Made by a program: the position numbers and the translations under genes
Notes under the pieces: generated by a model
The model's input: the letters and a program-made list of their open reading frames with translations, nothing else
Told to the model about the DNA's origin: nothing
Databases searched by the model: none
Part shown: positions 3,293 to 63,914 of the stretch, piece after piece
How positions within the stretch are numbered: position 1 is the stretch's first letter
Layout: the number at the start of each line of letters is the position of its first letter
Sequence record: MT135025.1
Length of the DNA: 64,000 nt
Strand: one strand, 5' to 3'

Positions 3293-3487
3293 TTGAAAAA
3301 GCGTGCGTGGTTCTTTGTATTTTGCGGAATCGGTGCTATAAGCTACTTCGGTGGCTTATTCTTAGCGTCTCTGCTTATCTCGAAGTCAATCGAAGCATCT
3401 ATAATGTTCATCGGAATCGTGTTTCTAGCTCTCTTAAATACAATCAGAGCGGGCATCGAAGAAGATGAAAACAACAAAGCCCCTTAA
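3293..3487 (+). CDS. small membrane protein
   Basis: two hydrophobic segments; TTG start. Confidence 0.55.
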   Translation: MKKRAWFFVFCGIGAISYFGGLFLASLLISKSIEASIMFIGIVFLALLNTIRAGIEEDENNKAP

Positions 3488-3500
3488 TTGGGGCTTTTTT
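3476..3500 (+). terminator. intrinsic terminator
   Basis: AAAGCCCC-TTAATT-GGGGCTTTTTT; same hairpin at 31061 and 50511. Confidence 0.85.
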
Positions 3501-3514
3501 ATGGGTGAAAGAAA

Positions 3515-4063
3515 ATGGCATTTATGAAAAAAGAGAAAGACGCAAAAGACATTACCGAAGCAGATATGCAGTACGCAATTGCAGTACAAAGCGTATGGAT
3601 TCACAAACGCTACACCGCGATTATTCCAAACTGTTACACCAAATGGGATAATGAAGCTGATCTGTTTGCTATTCGTCCAAGTGGTCTATGTGATGAGATT
3701 GAAATCAAAGTATCCAAAGCTGATTTTCGAATTGATGAGCAAAAATCAGTAAAGGTCATCGACGAAAGTACACCAAATCTACGGTGGCATCGTTACGAAG
3801 ACGTTCCAAAACGCACAGCATTGCAAGATGGTAAAATGTCGAACTACTTCTGGTATGCATTCCCTAAAGGGCTTGTAGACCACGCTGAAGTCCCAGAATG
3901 GGCTGGTATAATCGAAGTGGATGGATTTCTGAACGCCAGAGAAGTAAGAATGCCAAAACGTCTGCATGGTGGCAAGATGACAATCGAAGAGCAACTAAAA
4001 CAAATCAAGAAACTCGGCTATCGCTTCTGGAATCTGGTTAAAAAGAACAAAAAGGAACAGTGA
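3515..4063 (+). CDS. MmcB-like / PD-(D/E)xK nuclease-fold protein
   Basis: EADLFAI...DEIEIKVSKADF..D..K and NYFWYAFP..V...EVPEWAGII motifs. Confidence 0.55.
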   Translation: MAFMKKEKDAKDITEADMQYAIAVQSVWIHKRYTAIIPNCYTKWDNEADLFAIRPSGLCDEIEIKVSKADFRIDEQKSVKVIDESTPNLRWHRYEDVPKRTALQDGKMSNYFWYAFPKGLVDHAEVPEWAGIIEVDGFLNAREVRMPKRLHGGKMTIEEQLKQIKKLGYRFWNLVKKNKKEQ

Positions 4064-4139
4064 GGCGGAAAAATTCCGCATCATCTTAGTAGAATTAGTA
4101 GTTTTAGTGAAGTTAGAGATATTAGTAGTATTAGGAGAT
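4061..4139. repeat. hairpin plus 6x9-bp TTAG array, copy 1
   Basis: GCGGAA-AAA-TTCCGC then TTAG at 4086,4095,4104,4113,4122,4131; first 56 bp identical to 53757-53812. Confidence 0.9.
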
Positions 4140-4161: not shown

Positions 4162-4190
4162 TTGACAGTCTCCTTTTTTGATCGTACTAT
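4162..4190 (+). promoter_or_regulatory. sigma70-type early promoter
   Basis: TTGACA-17 bp-TACTAT. Confidence 0.7.
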
Positions 4191-4215: not shown

Positions 4216-4752
4216 GTGAAGACTATGAGCTTGAGTGAACGTGAAGAAGAGCTAAAAGCATTAGCGATTGACCATGTGTGTGACGATGAAGTTGCTGTCA
4301 CCGTTTCATGCGCTGGTATGAGTAATTACTACACTGTTTGCCCGTCAGAGTTCAAAGACTTTTTGGACAACCATGAGGGAACATCTTATGTAGCATTTGA
4401 ATGGCACAACATCCCAGATGATTTACAAGATGAAGAACTAGACTTCGATGGTCTACTTGCTTGGTTCAATCTAGATGAACATGAGCGTGAAATCTGCGAA
4501 GCATTGTATGATAATAACGTTTGTATGTCATACGAAGATGCAGCCGAGAAAGTTGCTGACTGTTGGGTTTTTGAAGGCACGAGCGAAGACTATGCAAGAC
4601 ATGTAACGTCTGAATTAATGGGCATTCGCTTAGAAGATATGCCTGTCATTGTAAGCAGCAACATCAACTGGGGTGATGTATTCATCGACCTTGACGCAGA
4701 AGGTAGTATCTACGAAATTGGTCGCGACAAATACTTAACAGTACACGGTTAA
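4216..4752 (+). CDS. ArdA-like antirestriction (DNA mimic) protein
   Basis: Very acidic; ArdA-like C-terminal pattern E.E...AL.....ED....V....FEG.SEDYA......EDMP......INWGDV..DL...G.I; start may be ATG 4225. Confidence 0.6.
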   Translation: MKTMSLSEREEELKALAIDHVCDDEVAVTVSCAGMSNYYTVCPSEFKDFLDNHEGTSYVAFEWHNIPDDLQDEELDFDGLLAWFNLDEHEREICEALYDNNVCMSYEDAAEKVADCWVFEGTSEDYARHVTSELMGIRLEDMPVIVSSNINWGDVFIDLDAEGSIYEIGRDKYLTVHG

Positions 4753-4754
4753 AA

Positions 4755-5333
4755 ATGAGTAGCACAAAAGGTAACGTTAACAAAGACGATTACTACGCTA
4801 CGCCAGACTGGATTGTTGAAGAGTTTCTTGAAAATTTCGAGAGACGGATACACACAACTCATCATTTGAGTATGCCTGCTATGCATGTTCTTGACCCATC
4901 ATGTGGTGGTTGTTCTGAACACAAAGCAGCATATCCAGTAGCTTACAAGAAATTGTATCATGTCGATATTGACACAATGGATATTCGTGAAGACAGTCAC
5001 GCGCAAATTATCGCGAACTATCTCGAAACTGATGTTCAGAAGAATCATTACGACATGATCATGACGAACCCGCCGTTCAGCTTATCAGTTGATTTTGCTG
5101 AGAAAGCATTGAGTGAAATCAAGAATGGTGGTTATGTCGTCATGCTACAGCGTCTGAACTGGCTAGGTAGTATCAAAAGAAAGCCTTTCTGGGACACAAT
5201 GCCCCTGAGAGCAGTGATGGTTCACCATCGTCGACCATCATTCCATGGTACAAAAGGCACAGACTCGATTGAGTACGCGCACTTTGTATTTCAAAAAGGT
5301 TACGCAGGTAAAGCAGAGATTATAGTAATATGA
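4755..5333 (+). CDS. DNA adenine (amino) methyltransferase
   Basis: DDYYATP, motif I VLDPSCGG, motif IV MTNPPF, EYAHFVF. Confidence 0.8.
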   Translation: MSSTKGNVNKDDYYATPDWIVEEFLENFERRIHTTHHLSMPAMHVLDPSCGGCSEHKAAYPVAYKKLYHVDIDTMDIREDSHAQIIANYLETDVQKNHYDMIMTNPPFSLSVDFAEKALSEIKNGGYVVMLQRLNWLGSIKRKPFWDTMPLRAVMVHHRRPSFHGTKGTDSIEYAHFVFQKGYAGKAEIIVI

Positions 5334-9777: not shown

Positions 9778-9783
9778 TGTAAA

Positions 9784-9819
9784 AAAGGGTTGACTACGGT
9801 CAACCCTTTCTTGTATTAT
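9784..9819 (+). promoter_or_regulatory. terminator/early-promoter cassette
   Basis: AAAGGGTTGAC-TACG-GTCAACCCTTT hairpin containing -35 TTGACT, TATTAT -10, then ATCGAAAC leader. Confidence 0.8.
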
Positions 9820-9856
9820 TCTCATATCGAAACGAAACACCGAAAGAGAGAATAAT

Positions 9857-24122: not shown

Positions 24123-24129
24123 TTAAAGA

Positions 24130-24165
24130 AAAGGGTTGACGCTTGTCAGCCCTTTCTTGTATTAT
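24130..24165 (+). promoter_or_regulatory. terminator/early-promoter cassette
   Basis: AAAGGGTTGAC-GCTT-GTCAGCCCTTT, TATTAT, ATCGAAACGACATCGACTAAC leader. Confidence 0.8.
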
Positions 24166-24206
24166 CTCTATATCGAAACGACATCGACTAACAGAGAGAG
24201 AAAATT

Positions 24207-24563: not shown

Positions 24564-24567
24564 GCAA

Positions 24568-24603
24568 AAAGTGGTTGCATGGTGTAGCCACTTACTGTAT
24601 TAT
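24568..24603 (+). promoter_or_regulatory. terminator/early-promoter cassette
   Basis: AAGTGGTTGCA-TGG-TGTAGCCACTT, TTGCAT-17 bp-TATTAT. Confidence 0.75.
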
Positions 24604-24642
24604 CTCTATATCGAAACGAGAACGACTAACAGAGAGAACATT

Positions 24643-25338: not shown

Positions 25339-25345
25339 AATGCAA

Positions 25346-25381
25346 AAAGTGGTTGCGTGCTGTAGCCACTTTCTGTATTAT
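25346..25381 (+). promoter_or_regulatory. terminator/early-promoter cassette
   Basis: AAAGTGGTTGC-GTGCT-GTAGCCACTTT, TTGCGT-17 bp-TATTAT. Confidence 0.75.
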
Positions 25382-25414
25382 CTCTATATCGAAACGAGAT
25401 ACAGAGAGAACATT

Positions 25415-30777: not shown

Positions 30778-31070
30778 TGGACATCGGTACATTAACTGCG
30801 TTATGTGAGCGGGCAGCGTTGTTGTCTGTTCACTTACCAGTTGAGAAGCGTGACCGTTGTCTATCTATGATTGATGTGCTTCTAGCGAATTCACATTGGC
30901 CCGATCTAAAGATTGGTGGATGGTTAGAGCACATTATCACAGTGTGCATTGAAAACGGTATAACGACTATCGACGCAGAGCGTGAATTCAGTCGTCCGAT
31001 AAAACATGCGTATTACAGAAGTATAGGTCTTGAACCGCCAGTTACTATTGACTTATCCAGAGCCCCTTAA
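30777..31070 (+). CDS. hypothetical protein
   Basis: TAATG-coupled ORF. Confidence 0.65.
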   Translation: MDIGTLTALCERAALLSVHLPVEKRDRCLSMIDVLLANSHWPDLKIGGWLEHIITVCIENGITTIDAEREFSRPIKHAYYRSIGLEPPVTIDLSRAP

Positions 31071-31083
31071 TTGGGGCTTTTTT
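31061..31083 (+). terminator. intrinsic terminator
   Basis: AGCCCC-TTAATT-GGGGCTTTTTT. Confidence 0.85.
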
Positions 31084-31124
31084 AGGTCTGAAGAAAAAAG
31101 TTTAAGTTTTTTTGCAAAAAGTGG

Positions 31125-31153
31125 TTGCATGGCGAATGGTAATCTCCTATTAT
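31125..31153 (+). promoter_or_regulatory. early promoter
   Basis: TTGCAT-17 bp-TATTAT, ATCGAAAC leader. Confidence 0.75.
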
Positions 31154-31208
31154 AGCTACATCGAAACGAGATACACAATCTTAAACGACTTAACTAAGAG
31201 AGAACATT

Positions 31209-34134: not shown

Positions 34135-34139
34135 CCAAA

Positions 34140-34174
34140 AAAGGGTTGCTTCGGCAGCCCTTTTTGCGTATTAT
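34140..34174 (+). promoter_or_regulatory. terminator/early-promoter cassette
   Basis: AAAGGGTTGC-TTCG-GCAGCCCTTT, TTGCTT-17 bp-TATTAT. Confidence 0.8.
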
Positions 34175-34203
34175 AGCTCTATCGAAACGAAAGAGAGAAC
34201 ATT

Positions 34204-42073: not shown

Positions 42074-42103
42074 CGGTTTGAAGAAAATAATTGCAAAAAA
42101 CGG

Positions 42104-42132
42104 TTGCATGAAACAACGAATAGACCTAATAT
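42104..42132 (+). promoter_or_regulatory. early promoter
   Basis: TTGCAT-17 bp-TAATAT, AGCTACATCGAAACG leader. Confidence 0.75.
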
Positions 42133-42166
42133 AGCTACATCGAAACGAGATAAGAAAGAGAACATT

Positions 42167-45299: not shown

Positions 45300-45479
45300 A
45301 TGAAATGTGAAATCTGCGGACACCCTGACGGGTACAGTGACGGTGTAGGTATGATTCTGTGCAATGACTGCTACAGTTTAGCACGTCGACCATTGATTGG
45401 TTACACTGAAGAAAGTCAGCCAGTTATCGTGCCACCGTCACTTGTAGACAAAATCAAAAAACTTTTCGAAAAGGGTTGA
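45300..45479 (+). CDS. small Zn-finger-like protein (59 aa)
   Basis: Manual translation MKCEICGH...LCNDC...; GAGG SD. Confidence 0.55.
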   Translation: MKCEICGHPDGYSDGVGMILCNDCYSLARRPLIGYTEESQPVIVPPSLVDKIKKLFEKG

Positions 45480-45505
45480 CTACGGTCAACCCTTTCTTGT
45501 ATTAT
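45470..45505 (+). promoter_or_regulatory. terminator/early-promoter cassette
   Basis: AAAGGGTTGAC-TACG-GTCAACCCTTTCTTGTATTAT, same as 9784-9819. Confidence 0.8.
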
Positions 45506-45540
45506 AGCTTCATCGAAACAAAACACGAAAAGAGAACATT

Positions 45541-50510: not shown

Positions 50511-50536
50511 AAAAGCCCCTTAATTGGGGCTTTTTT
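50511..50536 (+). terminator. intrinsic terminator
   Basis: AAAAGCCCC-TTAATT-GGGGCTTTTTT. Confidence 0.85.
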
Positions 50537-50565
50537 AGGTTTGATGAAAATAATTGAAAAAGTTA

Positions 50566-50594
50566 TTGACGAGTGTTTAGAATTTGCCTAATAT
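50566..50594 (+). promoter_or_regulatory. early promoter
   Basis: TTGACG-17 bp-TAATAT, ATCGAAACG leader. Confidence 0.75.
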
Positions 50595-50629
50595 GTGTCT
50601 ATCGAAACGAAACAACGAAAGAGAAAATT

Positions 50630-51310: not shown

Positions 51311-51737
51311 AGGTTGGTCAGATTACGAGCTTGAAGGTCGCTCAAAACAAGAACCTGTTCGACACAAGATGCAAGATTCAGTCGATGAAATGTGTCGTAT
51401 TATGCGAGACGAGCATGATCGTTTCAGCGTCTCAACTCACACGGTTGATTTCGACAATGGGATTGAGTTATGGCGCACCGATATGACTTGCATTTGGACT
51501 GGTAGAACTACTCAAAAGGTATTCACATGGGAACAAGCAAAACAGCTACGTGATGCATATGACGACGGTATGCAGACTAAGAAGACTAAAGCACAAGAAG
51601 AAATCGAACGCAAATTCTTGCGCAAAAAACAACGTCCCAAAGAGCCAGTAGCTGAGAAAAACAGTGATCGTGGCATTGGCGTTGAAATGGTTGGTATTAA
51701 GAAGTCAGATAAACGCTGGTGGGAGTTTTGGAAATGA
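51303..51737 (+). CDS. hypothetical protein
   Basis: GAGG SD; KRWWEFWK C-terminus. Confidence 0.65.
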   Translation: MTKGWSDYELEGRSKQEPVRHKMQDSVDEMCRIMRDEHDRFSVSTHTVDFDNGIELWRTDMTCIWTGRTTQKVFTWEQAKQLRDAYDDGMQTKKTKAQEEIERKFLRKKQRPKEPVAEKNSDRGIGVEMVGIKKSDKRWWEFWK

Positions 51738-52198
51738 AATCACAAGAAGAATTTGCACGTCAAGCAATGCGCGTAAGAGCAGCAGTTGGCTTGTTTGATA
51801 CAGACATTAGCTTCCAAGAAGCATTAAACGATGATTTGTCCCATCGTGGTCAGCGTGTCATGTCAGCGTTACCAGACAACATTCAGTTCATGTGGCAGAA
51901 ACGCGACGAAATGAACGAAAAGATTTTAGCTGAAATCAGTTGCATCGAAAAGCGCATTGACAAAACGCTATGCGAAATCAACGATCCGTTACATGCAATC
52001 GGAAAATACGTAGCGAAGAAATCAGGCAAGCCATTTAAAGGCGGCGAAGATATTGTCAAAGTAACGGGTATTACAAGACACCCTCACGTCGATGGGTATG
52101 CGTTTACTTACAACTACTCAGAAGAAGACGGTAAATTGGCACAATCATACATTCACACAGCTATGGTAATTATCAACTATTCTAGTTTGAAATTATGA
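51734..52198 (+). CDS. hypothetical protein
   Basis: GK.V.KKSGKPFK.G motif. Confidence 0.65.
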   Translation: MKSQEEFARQAMRVRAAVGLFDTDISFQEALNDDLSHRGQRVMSALPDNIQFMWQKRDEMNEKILAEISCIEKRIDKTLCEINDPLHAIGKYVAKKSGKPFKGGEDIVKVTGITRHPHVDGYAFTYNYSEEDGKLAQSYIHTAMVIINYSSLKL

Positions 52199-52665
52199 TC
52201 ATTTATGAAAACGGAATCCCCGTCAAGACTCACGAACATCAACCAGAGAGTAAAACAATGTTAGAAAAAGTAAACGAATTTGTAAAAGCAAAACCACTTG
52301 TATCACTTGCACTTGCCGTTGCAATCGGTGTAATTGGTACTAAAGTGATTCAATCTGATCCACTTGCTGAAAAACCGCTATTGAAATACCGCGTCGTGTA
52401 CGAATACAACAAAGATTACGGTCGTGATTGTGGTGATTTAGGCGACGGTTACTACTGGTACACGCAAGAACTCAACGAAGGCATCATCTTCGATAACTGG
52501 AAGCCAAGTGGTTGGTGTGCAGAAACCGAATCGGGTGCTCGTGAGTTGGCAGAAAGCGCGATTAAAAAGCGCATCGAAACTGAAAACTCTAAAGCGCGTG
52601 TATATCAAGCATGGGCAACTAAGGAAGACTCGGTACGTTTCGAGCCTCTAAAGGTGACTGAATGA
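52195..52665 (+). CDS. membrane-anchored hypothetical protein
   Basis: one TM; ATGA overlap. Confidence 0.6.
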   Translation: MIIYENGIPVKTHEHQPESKTMLEKVNEFVKAKPLVSLALAVAIGVIGTKVIQSDPLAEKPLLKYRVVYEYNKDYGRDCGDLGDGYYWYTQELNEGIIFDNWKPSGWCAETESGARELAESAIKKRIETENSKARVYQAWATKEDSVRFEPLKVTE

Positions 52666-52991
52666 TCTCACTAGGTACATTGATTGCACTGTTCGCAGTG
52701 CATTTCATTGCAGATTTCTTCGTACAAACTGAACATCAAGCAATGAACAAGAGCAAAGACATCTGGCCATTAGCTAGACACTGCCTAACATACGCACTGT
52801 GCTTCTTGCCATTTGGTATCCTGTTCGCAATCGTAACTGGTATACTGCACATGATTGTCGATTACATGACTTCAAGGATGACAAGCTCACTTTGGGCGAA
52901 AGGTGAAACTCGTAAGTTCTTCCAAGTCATCGGGTTCGATCAGTTCTTACATGCAGTTAGTTTAGTAACGATGTACGTAATTTTGAATTAA
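52662..52991 (+). CDS. DUF3307-like membrane protein
   Basis: HFIADFFVQT..QA.NKS, H.IVDY, IGFDQFLH. Confidence 0.75.
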   Translation: MISLGTLIALFAVHFIADFFVQTEHQAMNKSKDIWPLARHCLTYALCFLPFGILFAIVTGILHMIVDYMTSRMTSSLWAKGETRKFFQVIGFDQFLHAVSLVTMYVILN

Positions 52992-52998
52992 TTAAAGA

Positions 52999-53034
52999 AA
53001 AGTGGTTGCTCTATGCAGCCACTTTCTGTATTAT
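52999..53034 (+). promoter_or_regulatory. terminator/early-promoter cassette
   Basis: AAAGTGGTTGC-TCTAT-GCAGCCACTTT, TTGCTC-17 bp-TATTAT. Confidence 0.75.
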
Positions 53035-53073
53035 AGCTACATCAAGTGACGAGTTAAACAAAAAGAGAACATT

Positions 53074-53322
53074 ATGAAAATCAATCTTCGCAAACTTCTA
53101 ATGTGGTGGGACGAAAACGAACAAGTTGCTGCCGAGTTCACGAACTTCGTGCTTGAGTATGCAATGAAAGCTGGTAGTGACAACTTCATTTCAGATTATG
53201 CAACTTATCTTCGTGATTCTGGCAAGTACACTGTGCCAAATCTAGCCGACTTAGAATCTCTTCTTCGTCATGCGGGATTGAAATCTGAGTTTGATGGTCG
53301 CCACACTCGAATCGTTCTATAA
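53074..53322 (+). CDS. hypothetical early protein
   Basis: GAGAACATTATG start context. Confidence 0.7.
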   Translation: MKINLRKLLMWWDENEQVAAEFTNFVLEYAMKAGSDNFISDYATYLRDSGKYTVPNLADLESLLRHAGLKSEFDGRHTRIVL

Positions 53323-53331
53323 GAGGTCAAT

Positions 53332-53751
53332 ATGTTAAAGAAAATATGGCAAGCATTATTTCCAGACCCTGAATGGAAAGTAGCAGCATACACAGCTCAG
53401 AAGTCGTTCGATGTATCTAGCTCTTGGTGTAATAAAGGGGTTATTAAGTGTCGTGCAGTTATTCTAGTAGACAAGCATGACCGCCGACAAGTTAGAGTAG
53501 TATTCGATGAGTACGATTATGGTCGAGAAATATCAGCGTACAATGAGAACTTAATTCGAAAAATCTTATCGAGTAATAGTCTGGCATTGATTCGAGGCTC
53601 GATGAGTACTAGAAAGTTGAATAGCTATGATGGATTTGATCTGTGCGAACACCACGAAGCATTCTACGATTGGGAAACATTCAAGAATAACTTCATTTAT
53701 GGTGAAGTTGATTTATGTGGGAACTTAATTGAGAAAAGAGAAGCGGAATAG
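53332..53751 (+). CDS. hypothetical protein
   Basis: GAGG SD. Confidence 0.65.
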   Translation: MLKKIWQALFPDPEWKVAAYTAQKSFDVSSSWCNKGVIKCRAVILVDKHDRRQVRVVFDEYDYGREISAYNENLIRKILSSNSLALIRGSMSTRKLNSYDGFDLCEHHEAFYDWETFKNNFIYGEVDLCGNLIEKREAE

Positions 53752-53756
53752 CCAAC

Positions 53757-53835
53757 TGAGGCGGAAAAATTCCGCATCATCTTAGTAGAATTAGTAGTTT
53801 TAGTGAAGTTAGTAATATTAGGAGTATTAGAATGA
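53757..53835. repeat. hairpin plus 6x9-bp TTAG array, copy 2
   Basis: TTAG at 53782,53791,53800,53809,53818,53827; 56 bp identical to 4061-4116. Confidence 0.9.
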
Positions 53836-54527
53836 AGAAGCTCGTACTTGTAGCTGCCGCGGCTGTAGCTCTTGCCGGATGTGGTGATGTGCCACGTCTG
53901 GAAACTAAGACAGACAAGAAATTCACCACTGTTAATGCAGTCGTGAACAAAAAAGAGCGTGAAATGATTAACTACTGGATGGCAGATGCTGACGGTAGTA
54001 ACTATCTTTACAACAAGCTTTGGACTGCTCTTGCTACTCGTAACAAATACGGTTCTAATGCTGTGCGTCGTTCAGATGATGAAGTTCCGTTCTGTGATGT
54101 CATTGTAGCCCTTGCTAAATCTGAAGAAGATATTCGAAGCACGTACGAGCGCACATTTAATAATCAGTGGCGAACTCAATACGGAATTAGTCTTAATCAG
54201 CAATGTGGCTATACTCCACCAGAAACACTCGAAGAGCAAGCAGAGCGCGTTGAGAAACTTGAAATGCAAGCTGATTTGAAAAAGCGTGAGCAACAAGCAC
54301 AGAGTATTGAAACGCTTGATGACGTTGCCGACGCGACGACTGAGCTACTTGATCCGCATGAGTACGACTATCTGATCGAATCGGCACGCGAGTGTAATCG
54401 AGCCAAAACCAAATTGCTTGAACTAACGCAAGCAGGCAAACCTTTGACACAAGCTGACGGCTCAGATGCACGTAAGCTAATTATCGAATGCAAAATGCAT
54501 AAACTTGAAGTTGAATTGAATAAGTGA
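53832..54527 (+). CDS. putative lipoprotein
   Basis: MKKLVLVAAAAVALAG|C lipobox; AGGAG SD lies inside the TTAG array. Confidence 0.7.
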   Translation: MKKLVLVAAAAVALAGCGDVPRLETKTDKKFTTVNAVVNKKEREMINYWMADADGSNYLYNKLWTALATRNKYGSNAVRRSDDEVPFCDVIVALAKSEEDIRSTYERTFNNQWRTQYGISLNQQCGYTPPETLEEQAERVEKLEMQADLKKREQQAQSIETLDDVADATTELLDPHEYDYLIESARECNRAKTKLLELTQAGKPLTQADGSDARKLIIECKMHKLEVELNK

Positions 54528-54534
54528 GAAAAAC

Positions 54535-55317
54535 ATGTTGAGAACAAATATTGCGATTGAAGAACTGAAAATCCGAATGCATCCGTTCGATCAAGTTGCG
54601 AACGCAAACAACGACGATAGCTCAGTTCGCGACTGGCGGCAAATCCCTGAAGTTGCTAATGACAATATCTTGAAGAACTCGGTTCTACCGTCGTGGGTAA
54701 TTCGAGAGTTTCACTGGCGTGATATTTCATTCAATCAACCATCAATGGGTGATCTGCCCGTTGAGTACAAAACAGAAGCAGGTGAAATCGGTAAATGTCA
54801 ATCGCATTATCTCGGTGAACTTGATGATTGCAAGTTCTGGCGCCCTGATATTGTATCTTTGAATGCTCAATTCATTGATTCAAAAGACGTTGATAAAGCA
54901 CTTGCAGAATTGCAAGCCGTTGATGTGTTTGACGCTTCACAAGGATTCGCTGACGGTCGACCTGACCCGGTTAGTCACAATGAACACGGTATCACCGATG
55001 ATGAGCTTGAAGCTGCAATCGTCGAAGCTGAAATGGCAGCGGCTGTGGATGCTTTAAAAGTTGAGTCGCAATCGTTGTTCGATCCAGATCATGTTTATTA
55101 CATGAATGAAAAGTATTATATTATCGGTGACGACCCGTTTGACGAAAATTACTGCTATGCGTTGAATGCTGCAAAATACCCACAGCGTATTGCAAAATCC
55201 CAACTCGTAACCGATGAGCAATACAAAGAAGCTGAAGTTTTGAAGAATCAGTTCCCGCAGATGTGGACTGCTCAAGATTACGCAAAGCTTGCTAAGTTCA
55301 TTCGCAGCAAAAAGTAG
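54535..55317 (+). CDS. hypothetical acidic protein
   Basis: 260 aa ORF. Confidence 0.7.
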   Translation: MLRTNIAIEELKIRMHPFDQVANANNDDSSVRDWRQIPEVANDNILKNSVLPSWVIREFHWRDISFNQPSMGDLPVEYKTEAGEIGKCQSHYLGELDDCKFWRPDIVSLNAQFIDSKDVDKALAELQAVDVFDASQGFADGRPDPVSHNEHGITDDELEAAIVEAEMAAAVDALKVESQSLFDPDHVYYMNEKYYIIGDDPFDENYCYALNAAKYPQRIAKSQLVTDEQYKEAEVLKNQFPQMWTAQDYAKLAKFIRSKK

Positions 55318-55346
55318 TTTCCGATGCGGGTTGTTACGACATCCCG

Positions 55347-55354
55347 CATAAATA
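55347..55354 (+). promoter_or_regulatory. T4-type late promoter (CATAAATA) overlapping a hairpin
   Basis: One mismatch to TATAAATA; stem ATGCGGG/CCCGCAT at 55324-55349. Confidence 0.55.
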
Positions 55355-55386
55355 GTTCTATATGGACTAACAAGGAAATTACGACA

Positions 55387-55917
55387 ATGCCAACTCCTAC
55401 AACAGGTGCGATTTCAATCGGTACCGTTCGTGATTATTTCAGTAGAACCGGCGCTGCTTCATTGTCTCAGTACTACAGAGGCGGCGGTATTGTTCCTGAT
55501 ATTACTGAAAATGCTCACGTACCAACTTCAGGCGCAATTAGCTTGAATGACTTGCGCGGTGTATATCGCTTGTCAACGTATACGACATCATTTACGACAA
55601 CATACAACACCACTGTATCAACATCGAATACGACTTCGCGTAGTACGTCAAGAAGTACAACTAGAAGTACTGCATACAGTACAACTCGTTCGACTTCATA
55701 TACCACGACATACAACACGTCTGTTACTACGTCAGTAACGAAAGGTTCGTATACAACGACATACGCAACATCACGTGCCACGACTCGTTCAACTGCTTAT
55801 GACACAACACGTTCAACCGCTTATACGTCTACATGGACGACATCGTGGACAACGACATACAACACAACGTATTCAACATCAAACACAACCTCGCGAAGCA
55901 CGCAAGTTGCAGTTTAA
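55387..55917 (+). CDS. Ser/Thr tetrapeptide-repeat protein with N-terminal virion-type module
   Basis: AAGGA SD; N-term GAIS...SLSQYYRGGG.VP...VPTSGAISLNDLRG; C-terminal 114 aa with 72 Ser/Thr by manual count. Confidence 0.8.
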   Translation: MPTPTTGAISIGTVRDYFSRTGAASLSQYYRGGGIVPDITENAHVPTSGAISLNDLRGVYRLSTYTTSFTTTYNTTVSTSNTTSRSTSRSTTRSTAYSTTRSTSYTTTYNTSVTTSVTKGSYTTTYATSRATTRSTAYDTTRSTAYTSTWTTSWTTTYNTTYSTSNTTSRSTQVAV

Positions 55918-55929
55918 CAGGGTTAAATT

Positions 55930-56148
55930 ATGAGCTACAATGAAGAACACGAGAGCCGAATCAACGAGCTTGAGAACAAGGTTTCAAAGCTTGAGTTGAT
56001 AATTGAAAATCTGGTTGAGTCAATGACTTCGAACAGCGAAGCTATTATCGAACATATTGCATCACTTGAGACCGAGAGAGATTCGATTCTTGCATCATAT
56101 GATGACAAACTTAATGAGATCGTGACCAAATATGAACCCAAGCAATAG
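55930..56148 (+). CDS. small coiled-coil protein
   Basis: heptad pattern RINELENKVSKLELIIENL. Confidence 0.65.
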   Translation: MSYNEEHESRINELENKVSKLELIIENLVESMTSNSEAIIEHIASLETERDSILASYDDKLNEIVTKYEPKQ

Positions 56149-56986
56149 AGAAATGACTGGGTTCAATAACATTTCTCGCATCGGTAAGTTGAAATTACAA
56201 GCCGATGCAGACAACGTCCGTGCCATGTGTATGGACGTTGTTCGTTTATTGAACTCCAAAAATATACCATCTAACTTCGACATCAATCATAATGACGGTG
56301 GTAACATCGGCGTGCATGAATGGGTGTCACAAATCCGCTTCATTCACTTGAAATACATGAACGTTAATTTCCAAACGAAGATTTTCAAGCATGCCTATCA
56401 TAACACTGAAAACGTCGTTGACTATTTTGACACGTTCAAACATTCTGACAAATATCATCTATCAGCGAAGCCTAGATTTTTAGAATATGAAAACGTCGTA
56501 TTTCTATGTGGATCGAATGTACTTGAATTGGCAATTGACTTTGACAAGATTGATACGCTGGTCGAACAATATCCCGATTTAGTGATCAAACCTCACCCGA
56601 TTACGACGCTGTATTACATTAATATGCTTAAAACTCGATATGGATCGAAGCGCGTGCTTTCTCAGAAGATCAGCGGTGTTGATGTTCTTAAATCTGCTAA
56701 ACGTGTTTGGCTGCCTTCAACGTCTGAGTTCTGGTTTAGTGCCTTGAACTACGACAAAGAAATCGGGTTTATCTCTAAAGATGGTTTCTGTGGAACGTAC
56801 ACGTCAATCATCAACGCAGTATGGGAATTGCATGAAGAAACCGGTGAGCCATTGAAAGATATTGTGAATAAAATTATATCGTCACCTTACTCAGGTCTGT
56901 ATGGTAGTATGGCAGACTTTGAAGAGCATCACGAGAAATACTGTAATGTGATTCTGGAACTAGGGGGTAATTTCGATAATGTATGA
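56132..56986 (+). CDS. putative GT-B-like transferase (KpsC/KpsS-type C-terminal motif)
   Basis: LVIKPHP, SGVDVLKSAKRV...STSE.WF.AL..DKEI pattern; family call tentative. Confidence 0.4.
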   Translation: MNPSNREMTGFNNISRIGKLKLQADADNVRAMCMDVVRLLNSKNIPSNFDINHNDGGNIGVHEWVSQIRFIHLKYMNVNFQTKIFKHAYHNTENVVDYFDTFKHSDKYHLSAKPRFLEYENVVFLCGSNVLELAIDFDKIDTLVEQYPDLVIKPHPITTLYYINMLKTRYGSKRVLSQKISGVDVLKSAKRVWLPSTSEFWFSALNYDKEIGFISKDGFCGTYTSIINAVWELHEETGEPLKDIVNKIISSPYSGLYGSMADFEEHHEKYCNVILELGGNFDNV

Positions 56987-57611
56987 TTATGTAATTCACA
57001 CTTCGATTAGTGACAAAAGTCAGTTAAACCAACTAGCAATGTTTGTCGGGTCTTTCATCGAGACACACAAAAAAGGTCGCGTGGTCTGCGTGACGGATCT
57101 TGAACTTGATTTCACGATGCCTCGACTGACATTTGAGAAAAAACTGCCAGACGAGTACGTTTTCATTTCAGTTGACAATCTATTTTTGCAAAAAACATAC
57201 GGCGTTGTTAGCTACATTGACAGTGGTACTTGGCGATGTACTTGGCAAAAGAATGATCATGATGATTTCGTTATTAAAAAGCATGGTGAAAGAAGCGGAT
57301 TGATTCACCCTGATATTGCAATTGCAAATTACAATGTTTCCAGACATGGCGATCTCGACATGTATTACAACGCGCTTCGTTACATTGAGAACGCCATCAC
57401 GATCAACTGCAAAGACTTTGCTCCTGCTGCTGAGAATAAAATCAACAGCTTTTACACGCTTGTATTTCCATGGGAGATTTATTTTCACGTTATGATCACT
57501 TACCAAGAGTATATTGATTCTGAATACGTTGAGCGAGTTCGCGCTAACTGTCATAAGTTCGCACACTCGGTTTATTACAGAAAATCAGGGTTGTTGCGTG
57601 ATGGGTTATGA
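56979..57611 (+). CDS. hypothetical protein, possibly GT-A-like
   Basis: VVCVTD ... FISVDNLF resembles a degenerate DxD region; weak. Confidence 0.3.
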   Translation: MYDYVIHTSISDKSQLNQLAMFVGSFIETHKKGRVVCVTDLELDFTMPRLTFEKKLPDEYVFISVDNLFLQKTYGVVSYIDSGTWRCTWQKNDHDDFVIKKHGERSGLIHPDIAIANYNVSRHGDLDMYYNALRYIENAITINCKDFAPAAENKINSFYTLVFPWEIYFHVMITYQEYIDSEYVERVRANCHKFAHSVYYRKSGLLRDGL

Positions 57612-63807: not shown

Positions 63808-63839
63808 AACGTGACATTGTTCACTAAAAATCGTAAATT

Positions 63840-63873
63840 TAGGGTTGCTTCGGCAGCCCTTTTTTCGTATTAT
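63840..63873 (+). promoter_or_regulatory. terminator/early-promoter cassette
   Basis: AGGGTTGC-TTCG-GCAGCCCTTTTTT, TTGCTT-17 bp-TATTAT, ATCGAAACGACATCGACTAAC leader. Confidence 0.8.
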
Positions 63874-63914
63874 AGCTACATCGAAACGACATCGACTAAC
63901 AAAGAGAGAATATT

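What the first reader, a model, noticed from the sequence alone, without database searches (positions are those of the whole stretch)
4061..4139. Duplicated hairpin + six perfectly phased 9-bp TTAG units (also at 53757-53835)
Seen: TGAGGCGGAA-AAA-TTCCGC-ATCATC followed by six TTAG cores at an exact 9-bp period. The element occurs twice, ~49.7 kb apart, and the first 56 bp are identical. The later units diverge (TTAGAGATA/TTAGTAGTA/TTAGGAGAT vs TTAGTAATA/TTAGGAGTA/TTAGAATGA) but keep the phase, which implies selection on spacing. It is intergenic in both places, almost C-free on the top strand, and reads as a run of stop codons in one frame. Inference: an iteron-like protein-loading array (origin/helicase loading, as with T4 oriE iterons), a packaging or nucleoid-organising site, or a repeated ncRNA/sponge.
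Basis: partly seen in the sequence, partly recalled or inferred. Interest (0 to 1): 0.65.

Follow-up and report, generated by a model that had tools for sequence, protein, structure and literature searches.

The report
Six-copy hairpin plus TTAG-array phage element
The two look-alike stretches are two of six copies of a strongly conserved non-coding DNA signal found in every KVP40-like Vibrio phage and copied by parasite-like islands of Vibrio chromosomes; it is most likely a place where the phage opens its DNA to start replication, which nobody has described or tested.

Summary
The window is Vibrio phage V07, a KVP40-like T4 relative. Both stretches hold a 9-bp hairpin, the spacer ATC, and six TTAG units at an exact 9-bp period.

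They are two of six copies. All six phage genomes I examined carry the element in the same six gaps between genes, always on the coding strand. It usually lies between a terminator and an early promoter. One copy sits in front of uvsY.

The element is about 95% conserved where the flanking genes are about 76% identical. The hairpin keeps pairing through a two-pair compensatory change. The arrays are the least stable duplex within 500 bp on either side.

A family of Vibrio chromosomal islands shares only this element with the phage. These islands carry T4-type late promoters, and some carry a gp45-like clamp. Nine of eleven islands have the array. The two without it are the two that carry their own VapE-like helicase/primase pair.

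Best reading (about 0.4): a sequence-defined replication-start or helicase-loading site. Rivals are a packaging signal, a transcription or RNA element, and a repeat kept by gene conversion. No experimental data exist, and the RNA runs I tried held no phage reads. Earlier agents of this scan found the same element on other pieces of this genome.

The parts
4062..4082 (+). Hairpin of copy 1: 9-bp stem with one mismatch and an AAA loop.
   Evidence: Sequence. Predicted as the only stable structure of the top strand. Across 37 copies 90% of cells pair and two pairs show a compensatory change.
4083..4139 (+). Invariant ATC spacer plus six 9-bp TTAG units of copy 1. The stretch is free of C and predicted to be unstructured.
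   Evidence: The orthologous array in KVP40 is the local minimum of duplex stability.
4162..4190 (+). Sigma-70-type early promoter (TTGACA, 17 nt, TACTAT) just downstream of copy 1, firing away from it towards ORF 4216-4752.
   Evidence: Conserved in nt-1, VH7D and KVP40.
3515..4063 (+). Upstream ORF (182 aa, unknown function). Its stop codon overlaps the start of copy 1.
53737..53746 (+). Degenerate form of the upstream AGCGAAGCG mini-hairpin motif. It lies inside the last codons of ORF 53332-53751.
   Evidence: KVP40 has the intact motif at this locus.
53758..53778 (+). Hairpin of copy 2.
53779..53835 (+). ATC spacer plus six 9-bp TTAG units of copy 2. The last two units supply the Shine-Dalgarno sequence and the ATG of the lipoprotein gene.
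   Evidence: No promoter on the + strand lies between the array and the ORF.
53832..54527 (+). Downstream lipoprotein-like ORF (signal peptide with a lipobox cysteine). It must be transcribed through copy 2.

Best explanation
The element is a cis-acting DNA signal of KVP40-like phages. Its most likely job is to mark and open the places where phage DNA replication starts, acting as an origin or primosome-loading module.

Proposed mechanism:
- The C-free, TA-rich TTAG array is the easiest DNA to melt in its neighbourhood.
- The early promoter next to it fires away from it. The negative supercoiling left behind RNA polymerase helps the array to open.
- On the freed top strand the main hairpin folds at the 5' edge, together with the small GCGAAGC-type hairpin in the copies that have it. 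This leaves about 54 nt of unstructured single strand.
- The phage helicase and primase, and then the clamp and polymerase, are loaded on that strand. The fork moves in the direction of local transcription.
- The phased, position-specific units probably position a protein oligomer that has not been identified.

Shown: the anatomy, six syntenic copies, strong conservation, hairpin covariation, low duplex stability, co-orientation with genes, and capture by satellite-like islands.

Inferred: the opening of the DNA, the loading of proteins, and replication itself.
For: 1. Six copies sit in the same six gaps in KVP40, nt-1, VH7D, D480, 1.081.O and K566, spaced 26-54 kb apart. By comparison, T4 uses at least five dispersed origins, mostly in regions of late genes (PMC3016281).

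2. One copy lies directly in front of the uvsY promoter, which is the place of T4 oriF. Three copies lie at the junction between a late gene cluster and an early promoter.

3. The element is 95.9% identical between V07 and the D480 group, where the flanking DNA is about 76% identical.

4. The arrays are 3-4 SD less stable than the genome mean. Each is the minimum within 500 bp on either side. They rank 5, 6, 8, 12 and 17 among the distinct least stable loci of KVP40.

5. The structure is specific to one strand. There is a compensatory GG/CC to CC/GG change, a G-T wobble in 20 of 37 copies that pairs only on the top strand, and a more stable fold on the top strand than on the bottom. The loops of the upstream mini-hairpin vary as GAA, GCA, GTCA and GTTA. 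From my own knowledge, this is the pattern of stable DNA hairpins closed by a G-A pair. The true RNA terminators nearby use GAAA or UUCG loops instead.

6. Vibrio islands share nothing with the phage except this element. They carry T4-type late promoters, and three carry a gp45-like clamp.

7. Nine of eleven islands have the array. The two without it are exactly the two with a VapE-like helicase/primase plus AAA pair. This fits the idea that the array supplies access to the phage's helicase and primase.
Against: - There are no replication data of any kind.
- In the T4 oriF model the unwinding element lies downstream of the priming promoter. Here the array lies upstream of it.
- T4 origins share no motif, so a sequence-defined origin would be a departure from T4.
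- No initiator was found, and no DnaA box lies within 300 bp of any copy.
- The islands have their own iterons and a putative Rep, and the array is 400-700 bp away from them.
- In three islands the main hairpin has decayed while the array is intact.
- The anti-correlation with VapE rests on 2 of 11 islands, and shared descent was not controlled.
- A 9-bp period is not typical of iterons.
Confidence: 0.4

Rival explanations
1. It is a packaging signal. The phased repeats wrap around the small-terminase ring or otherwise recruit the terminase, so packaging series start at six places. Islands that have no terminase genes copy the signal so that they are packaged too.
For: From general knowledge, satellites without packaging genes typically carry the helper's pac or cos site. 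The islands encode no capsid or terminase proteins. A period shorter than the helical repeat suits DNA wrapped around a ring. A hypervariable gene sits next to gene 16.
Against: There are six copies in both orientations and none lies next to gene 16; the nearest is 5.7 kb away. The small terminase is 163/163 identical over the 163 residues that lie within the records in D480 and K566, although all their arrays differ. T4-type packaging is known to need no specific site (my own knowledge). The islands without the array still carry the same late promoters. The variable neighbour of gene 16 looks like a virion beta-sandwich protein.
Confidence: 0.15
2. It acts in transcription or as RNA. It could be an upstream activating or insulating region for the adjacent early promoters, a loading point for the sliding clamp that activates late promoters, or a leader RNA that binds a protein at its UAG repeats.
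For: It is always co-oriented with the downstream gene, in six of six phage loci and in all nine islands that carry it. A promoter follows the array in five of six loci. At the lipoprotein locus the element must be transcribed, and it supplies the ribosome binding site. In the islands it lies between divergent late promoters.
Against: The distance from the array to the promoter varies by 2 to 25 bp between loci, so there is no fixed helical register. Terminators upstream and promoters downstream leave four copies in a gap with little transcription. The hairpin is not a terminator. There is no Rfam match. The loops of the mini-hairpin are of the DNA type rather than the RNA type.
Confidence: 0.2
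3. It has no sequence-specific job in the phage. It is a repeat kept uniform by frequent gene conversion in a highly recombinogenic genome. The islands carry it only as a short patch of homology that draws the phage's recombination-dependent replication and packaging onto them.
For: There is concerted change: all copies in K566 share the same altered central units, and the two hairpin variants switch between loci in different phages. From my own knowledge, plasmids with any T4 homology are replicated and packaged by T4. A six-copy sequence conserved across the genus is the best possible hook.
Against: The number and positions of copies are fixed across genomes whose genes differ by a quarter of their bases. 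The element is far better conserved than the coding flanks. The units keep position-specific sequences, and the hairpin shows compensatory change. These are signs of purifying selection, not drift.
Confidence: 0.1

Closest known systems
T4 replication origins oriF (uvsY) and oriG (gene 34)
   Same: There are several dispersed origins per genome. They lie in or next to late gene regions and depend on a nearby early or middle promoter and an easily unwound stretch. One KVP40 copy sits at the uvsY promoter.
   Different: T4 origins share no sequence motif (PMC3016281), and their unwinding element lies downstream of the promoter. Here one conserved module recurs six times and lies upstream of the promoter.
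T4 oriE iterons, and the iteron origins of plasmids and phage lambda
   Same: A cluster of evenly spaced short direct repeats in a non-coding stretch, conserved at the same place in relatives.
   Different: T4 oriE repeats are 12 nt long, occur at one locus and have no known role. Typical iterons are 17-22 bp long and bind a known Rep protein. Here the period is 9 bp, the units are position-specific, a hairpin flanks them, and no binding protein is known.
[quoted passage not shown]
   Same: TAG trinucleotides lie in one 3-nt register next to a GC-rich element, on a stretch that melts easily. This would suit a protein filament that binds 3 nt per subunit.
   Different: No DnaA box lies within 300 bp, and every third trinucleotide departs from the motif. 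The resemblance is only an analogy.
Single-strand initiation signals of small phages (G4 or phiX174 type), which include the d(GCGAAGC) mini-hairpin
   Same: Stable hairpins on one strand beside an unstructured stretch. The GCGAAGC motif itself is present.
   Different: Those signals work on single-stranded genomes with host primase or PriA. Here the genome is a 245-kb duplex and no activity has been tested.
Helper sites and machinery used by phage satellites (P4 cos; the PLE origin and RepA, which use ICP1's replisome; PICMI)
   Same: Chromosomal islands that depend on a lytic helper carry a helper-derived cis site and are switched on by helper transcription.
   Different: This island family is not PLE or PICMI. 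Here the helper would be a T4-type phage. The islands use T4-type late promoters and a gp45-like clamp, and they integrate with a large serine recombinase, in the islands where the junction is seen at the M32 carboxypeptidase gene.
PeSL promoter-early stem-loop cassettes of T4-like phages (PMC4122927)
   Same: Composite intergenic cassettes of a terminator-like stem-loop and an early promoter, repeated in the genome. Many lie in this window (family D1).
   Different: PeSLs have no TTAG array and a different stem consensus. They are numerous and lie in variable regions. This element has exactly six fixed places.

Membership tests
T4 oriF/oriG-type R-loop origin | A DNA unwinding element lies immediately downstream of the priming promoter. 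| tested here: not met
   The array is the least stable DNA locally. However, it lies upstream of the adjacent promoter, which fires away from it.
T4 oriF/oriG-type R-loop origin | The site supports replication of a plasmid, or early DNA synthesis, after infection. | not testable with these tools
   No DNA time-course data are available.
Iteron-type origin | Tandem direct repeats at a fixed period in a non-coding region. | tested here: met
   There are 5-7 units at exactly 9 bp in 37 copies.
Iteron-type origin | A cognate initiator protein whose specificity matches the repeats. | tested here: inconclusive
   The comparison of D480 with K566 gave no protein that co-varies with the changed arrays.
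Bacterial DnaA-box plus DnaA-trio unwinding module | A DnaA box lies within about 16 bp of the trios. | tested here: not met
   No box with at most 1 mismatch was found within 300 bp of 24 of the 25 copies scanned in four genomes; the one match lies 221 bp from its copy.
Bacterial DnaA-box plus DnaA-trio unwinding module | At least three consecutive trinucleotides of the NAN type, best as 3'-GAT-5'. | tested here: met
   Read directly from the sequence: the first five trinucleotides are TAG TAG AAT TAG TAG, and TAG fills 9 of 17 positions in one register. The motif definition comes from PMC8287927.
pac site of a headful phage | A site recognised by the small terminase, usually single and near the terminase genes. 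| tested here: not met
   There are six copies and none is at gene 16. The small terminase is unchanged where the arrays changed. End mapping was not possible.
Intrinsic terminator | A GC-rich hairpin followed directly by a run of T. | tested here: not met
   The hairpin is followed by ATCATC. The scan does not call it a terminator, whereas it does call true terminators upstream.
Known RNA families (Rfam 15) | A match to a covariance model at or near the gathering score. | tested here: not met
   Only two chance-level matches appeared, elsewhere in one locus.
PeSL cassette | A stem-loop of the A3-4G3/C3T3-4 type fused to an early promoter and a Shine-Dalgarno sequence. | tested here: not met
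   The stem sequence is different and the TTAG array is not part of a PeSL. True PeSLs are family D1; the definition comes.
Mobile miniature repeat (REP- or MITE-like) | Copy number and positions vary between related genomes. | tested here: not met
   The same six loci are occupied in all six genomes. The only extra is a tandem duplicate in 1.081.O.

The most novel reading that the evidence does not exclude
KVP40-like phages, unlike T4, use a dedicated and sequence-defined origin module in six copies. It would be opened as a single strand and read by an unidentified phage initiator or helicase loader. A widespread family of Vibrio islands is switched on by T4-type late transcription and sometimes carries its own gp45-like clamp. 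These islands would have stolen the module to have the helper's replisome copy them. If so, this is the first defined replicator sequence in the T4 group and a new kind of satellite of T4-type phages.
Probability: 0.3. Interest if true: 0.85.

Novelty: new variant of a known kind. Interest (0 to 1): 0.7.

Why it matters
How T4-type phages choose their replication origins is still poorly understood. T4's origins share no motif, and the oriE repeats have no assigned role. A conserved six-copy module of about 100 bp gives a defined DNA substrate for pull-downs, plasmid replication assays and deletion tests in a phage group used for Vibrio biocontrol.

The finding also exposes a family of Vibrio defence-carrying islands that seem to depend on T4-type helpers. 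These islands bear on horizontal transfer of defence systems by virulent phages. Whatever the element does, the fact that both the phage and its parasites keep it marks it as a control point of infection.

Tried and rejected
- **Expression.** The run search listed no RNA run that holds the phage. Four RNA runs that share the best holder's species label gave zero reads on window 51500-57000. This is no test of expression.
- **Rfam.** Nothing relevant.
- **Coding reading.** The open frame through the array, a Leu-Val-x repeat, was rejected. TTAG is invariant with no synonymous variation, several copies have no start codon, and the compensatory hairpin change alters the residues.
- **IMG/VR pattern scan.** It found only KVP40 and VH7D plus unrelated 9-bp tandem or coding repeats. 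The tempting hit L073 lies inside an ORF.
- **Species-representative genome scan.** It gave 31 unrelated matches, none with the hairpin and none in a Vibrio genome. Plasmids gave none.
- **Search for a trans factor.** I compared D480 and K566, which are 97-98% identical yet differ in all arrays. About 80 divergent patches turned up but no convincing partner. The small terminase is identical over the 163 residues compared. The variable 182-aa neighbour has no family and looks structural.
- **Host DnaA involvement.** No DnaA boxes were found.
- **PICMI satellites.** Their characterised helper is a 48-kb phage, and the paper does not mention this element.
- **Papers.** The KVP40 genome paper and the T4 genome review are not held, so I cannot exclude a passing mention there. 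Searches of the held library found no description.

Full report
**1. What is there**

The window is Vibrio phage V07, matched at 100%, and is about 98% identical to KVP40, a T4 relative of the genus Schizotequatrovirus.

- a hairpin with a 9-bp stem carrying one mismatch and an AAA loop;
- the spacer ATC;
- six 9-bp units that each start with TTAG.

The first 56 bases are identical in the two copies. The arrays hold no C. Neither the hairpin pattern nor the phased TTAG pattern occurs elsewhere in the window or in any shuffle.

**2. It is a six-copy family**

KVP40 holds six copies, at 35.9, 79.2, 129.7, 184.0, 210.0 and 238.2 kb. Nearly all of the 51 KVP40-like records hold five to seven places, and the records with fewer are partial assemblies.

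I located every copy in nt-1, VH7D, D480, 1.081.O and K566. The six loci are the same everywhere:
- downstream of the rnlB cluster (window copy 1);
- in front of a lipoprotein gene (window copy 2);
- between gene 12 and wac;
- between gene 35 and uvsY;
- between gene 3 and gene 1;
- in front of nrdH.

1.081.O has an extra tandem duplicate at the gene 3/gene 1 locus. The element always lies on the coding strand of its neighbours.

It is much better conserved than the genes around it. Identity between V07 and the D480 group is 95.9% for the element, against about 76% for the flanks.

**3. Anatomy (alignment A1, 37 copies)**

From 5' to 3' the element consists of:
- often an intrinsic terminator;
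- the motif AGCGAAGCG, whose loop varies as GAA, GCA, GTCA or GTTA while its GC stem stays;
- about 12 nt of spacer;
- the main hairpin;
- an invariant block that runs from the last bases of the stem through the ATC spacer into the first unit;
- five to seven units.

The first three units have position-specific sequences, so more than the TTAG core is conserved.

In four loci a sigma-70-type promoter (TTTAnn, 17 nt, TATAAT-like) follows at once. At the rnlB locus a promoter follows after about 25 bp. At the lipoprotein locus there is none, and the array supplies the ribosome binding site.

The hairpin pairs in 90% of cells. Two pairs have a GG/CC to CC/GG compensatory change in three copies. 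This amounts to one or two events, so the support is real but thin. Twenty copies have a G-T wobble that can pair only on the top strand. The top strand also folds 1-2 kcal/mol better than the bottom strand, and the array is predicted to be open.

Within one genome both stem versions coexist. What is kept is therefore complementarity rather than a protein's half-site.

**4. Concerted change**

D480 and K566 are 97-98% identical genome-wide. Even so, every K566 copy carries the same altered central units: two TTAG cores have become TTCG within a duplicated unit. The locus-specific differences at the edges of the element stay as in D480. 1.081.O has its own version in all its copies. The two hairpin variants also swap between loci in different phages.

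The copies therefore exchange sequence. Whether a partner protein changed with them I could not show. The small terminase is identical over the 163 residues that lie within the records, and no replication protein stands out. The variable 182-aa protein between genes 15 and 16 has no family and looks like a virion protein.

**5. Physical property**

With nearest-neighbour energies, the arrays are 3-4 SD less stable than the mean 54-bp window of KVP40. Each is the minimum within 500 bp on either side. Five of the six rank among the 17 least stable distinct loci of the 245-kb genome.

**6. Islands**

Earlier notes of this scan said the element also occurs in Vibrio islands, and I tested this.

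A metagenome scan gave two phage contigs and three contigs that share only the element with the phage. One of these is a chromosomal island. A protein next to the element (u345) has 84 homologue clusters in Vibrio and Photobacterium. I fetched eleven island loci.

*Conserved island features*
- Ten of the eleven loci show a large serine recombinase; the eleventh is cut off before that end. All eleven show an HTH protein and a resolvase-like protein.
- In most islands where the junction is visible, one end lies at the M32 carboxypeptidase gene.
- There is a 1.0-1.5 kb non-coding region in front of u345.
- In all five islands scanned in full, the T4 late-promoter octamer TATAAATA stands in front of u345 and in front of the small-gene operon; in three of them it also stands in front of the divergent gene pair. 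It stands in front of u345 in all eleven.

*Variable cargo*
- Cargo includes Thoeris and restriction systems.
- Three islands encode a gp45-like clamp. The one tested is 54-58% identical to the phages' gp45 over about 110 residues.

*The putative Rep*
- The N-terminal half of u345 changes together with the short repeats upstream of it, while its C-terminal 120 residues stay 57-87% identical.
- It is therefore probably an iteron-binding initiator or regulator. This is an inference.

*The TTAG array in the islands*
- Nine of eleven islands carry the array, co-oriented with u345.
- In at least two islands it looks like an insertion between duplicated island sequence.
- In three islands the main hairpin has decayed but the array is intact.
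- Two islands, from V. cyclitrophicus and Photobacterium, have an upstream part like the copies of phage D480, whose group was isolated on V. crassostreae. The other seven have a longer version.
- The two islands without the array are the only two with a VapE-like helicase/primase plus AAA pair. For 2 of 11 this gives a Fisher probability of 1/55. The sample is small and lineage was not controlled.

**7. Reading**

The conservation, the fixed places, the covariation and the capture by elements that live off the phage show that this is a functional cis-acting site. I put that at about 0.85.

*Replication start or helicase loading (about 0.4).* The points in favour:
- there are several dispersed sites, as in T4;
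- one sits at uvsY;
- the DNA there melts very easily;
- the structure is strand-specific, with hairpin loops of the DNA type;
- an unstructured C-free strand follows;
- orientation matches transcription;
- the islands appear to need the array only when they lack their own helicase/primase.

The weak points:
- the promoter fires away from the array, so the T4 oriF R-loop scheme does not fit as such;
- I therefore propose opening by the negative supercoiling behind the polymerase, which is an inference;
- there is no initiator and no DnaA box;
- the TAG trinucleotides in one register only resemble DnaA-trios;
- the 9-bp period is unexplained.

*Packaging signal (0.15).* It is weakened by the six copies in both orientations and by the unchanged small terminase.

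*Transcription or RNA role (0.2).* It is weakened by the terminator-promoter sandwich and by the variable distance to the promoter. It stays possible at the lipoprotein locus, where the element is in the mRNA.

*Repeat without function, used by islands as a homology hook (0.1).* It does not explain the purifying selection in the phage. The hook idea may still hold for the islands.

**8. Novelty**

I found no description in the papers I could search or read. The KVP40 genome paper itself is not held. Other agents of this scan reported the same element from other pieces of this genome.

- the concerted change in K566;
- the stability ranking;
- the late promoters of the islands, the Rep-like u345 and the link between array absence and VapE;
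- the test showing an unchanged terminase;
- the negative DnaA-box test.

Noticed in passing
window 9780-9837, 24126-24183, 24564-24621, 25342-25399, 31114-31171, 34135-34192, 42093-42150, 45466-45523, 50555-50612, 52995-53052, 63834-63891: Eleven copies of a 58-nt cassette (stem-loop, TTG-type -35 box, TATTAT -10 box, conserved leader ATCGAAACGA), often followed by a conserved Shine-Dalgarno sequence and ATG. These match the published PeSL promoter-early stem-loop cassettes of the nt-1/KVP40 pair (PMC4122927).
   Followed up: partly
window 3478-3500, 31061-31083, 50514-50536: Three near-identical copies of an intrinsic terminator (GCCCC, loop TTAATT, GGGGC, then a T run). Two of them lie just upstream of PeSL cassettes.
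   Followed up: no
window 55324-55917: An ORF of 197 aa made largely of Ser/Thr/Tyr-rich repeats (TTYNTT-like). The underlying DNA repeats are families D10 and D11. D480 has only distant homologues (25-55% identity) of the KVP40 genes just downstream, and K566 and 1.081.O lack most of them.
   Followed up: no
L168 (whole locus), L169-L172, L174-L179: A family of roughly 15-kb Vibrionaceae islands. Where the junction is seen they sit at the M32 carboxypeptidase gene, and they carry a large serine recombinase. They have T4-type late promoters, a Rep-like protein whose N-terminal half co-varies with upstream iterons, variable defence cargo (Thoeris, restriction systems, GmrSD), and either a gp45-like clamp, unknown pairs, or a VapE-like helicase pair. 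They look like undescribed satellites of T4-type vibriophages.
   Followed up: partly
L018 1296-1624 (phage 1.081.O, gene 3/gene 1 locus): The element is duplicated in tandem, about 164 bp apart, together with its upstream GCGAAGCG motif. This is the only departure from six copies that I saw.
   Followed up: no
KVP40 215075-215623 (L117:15075-15623); D480 252528-253076: A 182-aa protein of unknown function (phrog_13135) lies between gene 15 and gene 16. It is only 67.6% identical between D480 and K566, although their genomes are 97-98% identical. The C-terminal part of gp15 next to it is also divergent. This is probably an exchanged virion surface module.
   Followed up: partly
record MT135025.1 (source of the window): The V07 record is 349 kb long, whereas all relatives are 239-255 kb. 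It may be a concatenated or misjoined assembly. Repeats such as this element could cause that.
   Followed up: no
window 3515-4063 and 4755-5333: Copy 1 lies between an ORF with a possible PD-(D/E)XK-like motif (D...EIEIK) and, one gene further on, an N6-adenine DNA methyltransferase (NPPF motif). The nuclease guess comes from reading the sequence only.
   Followed up: no
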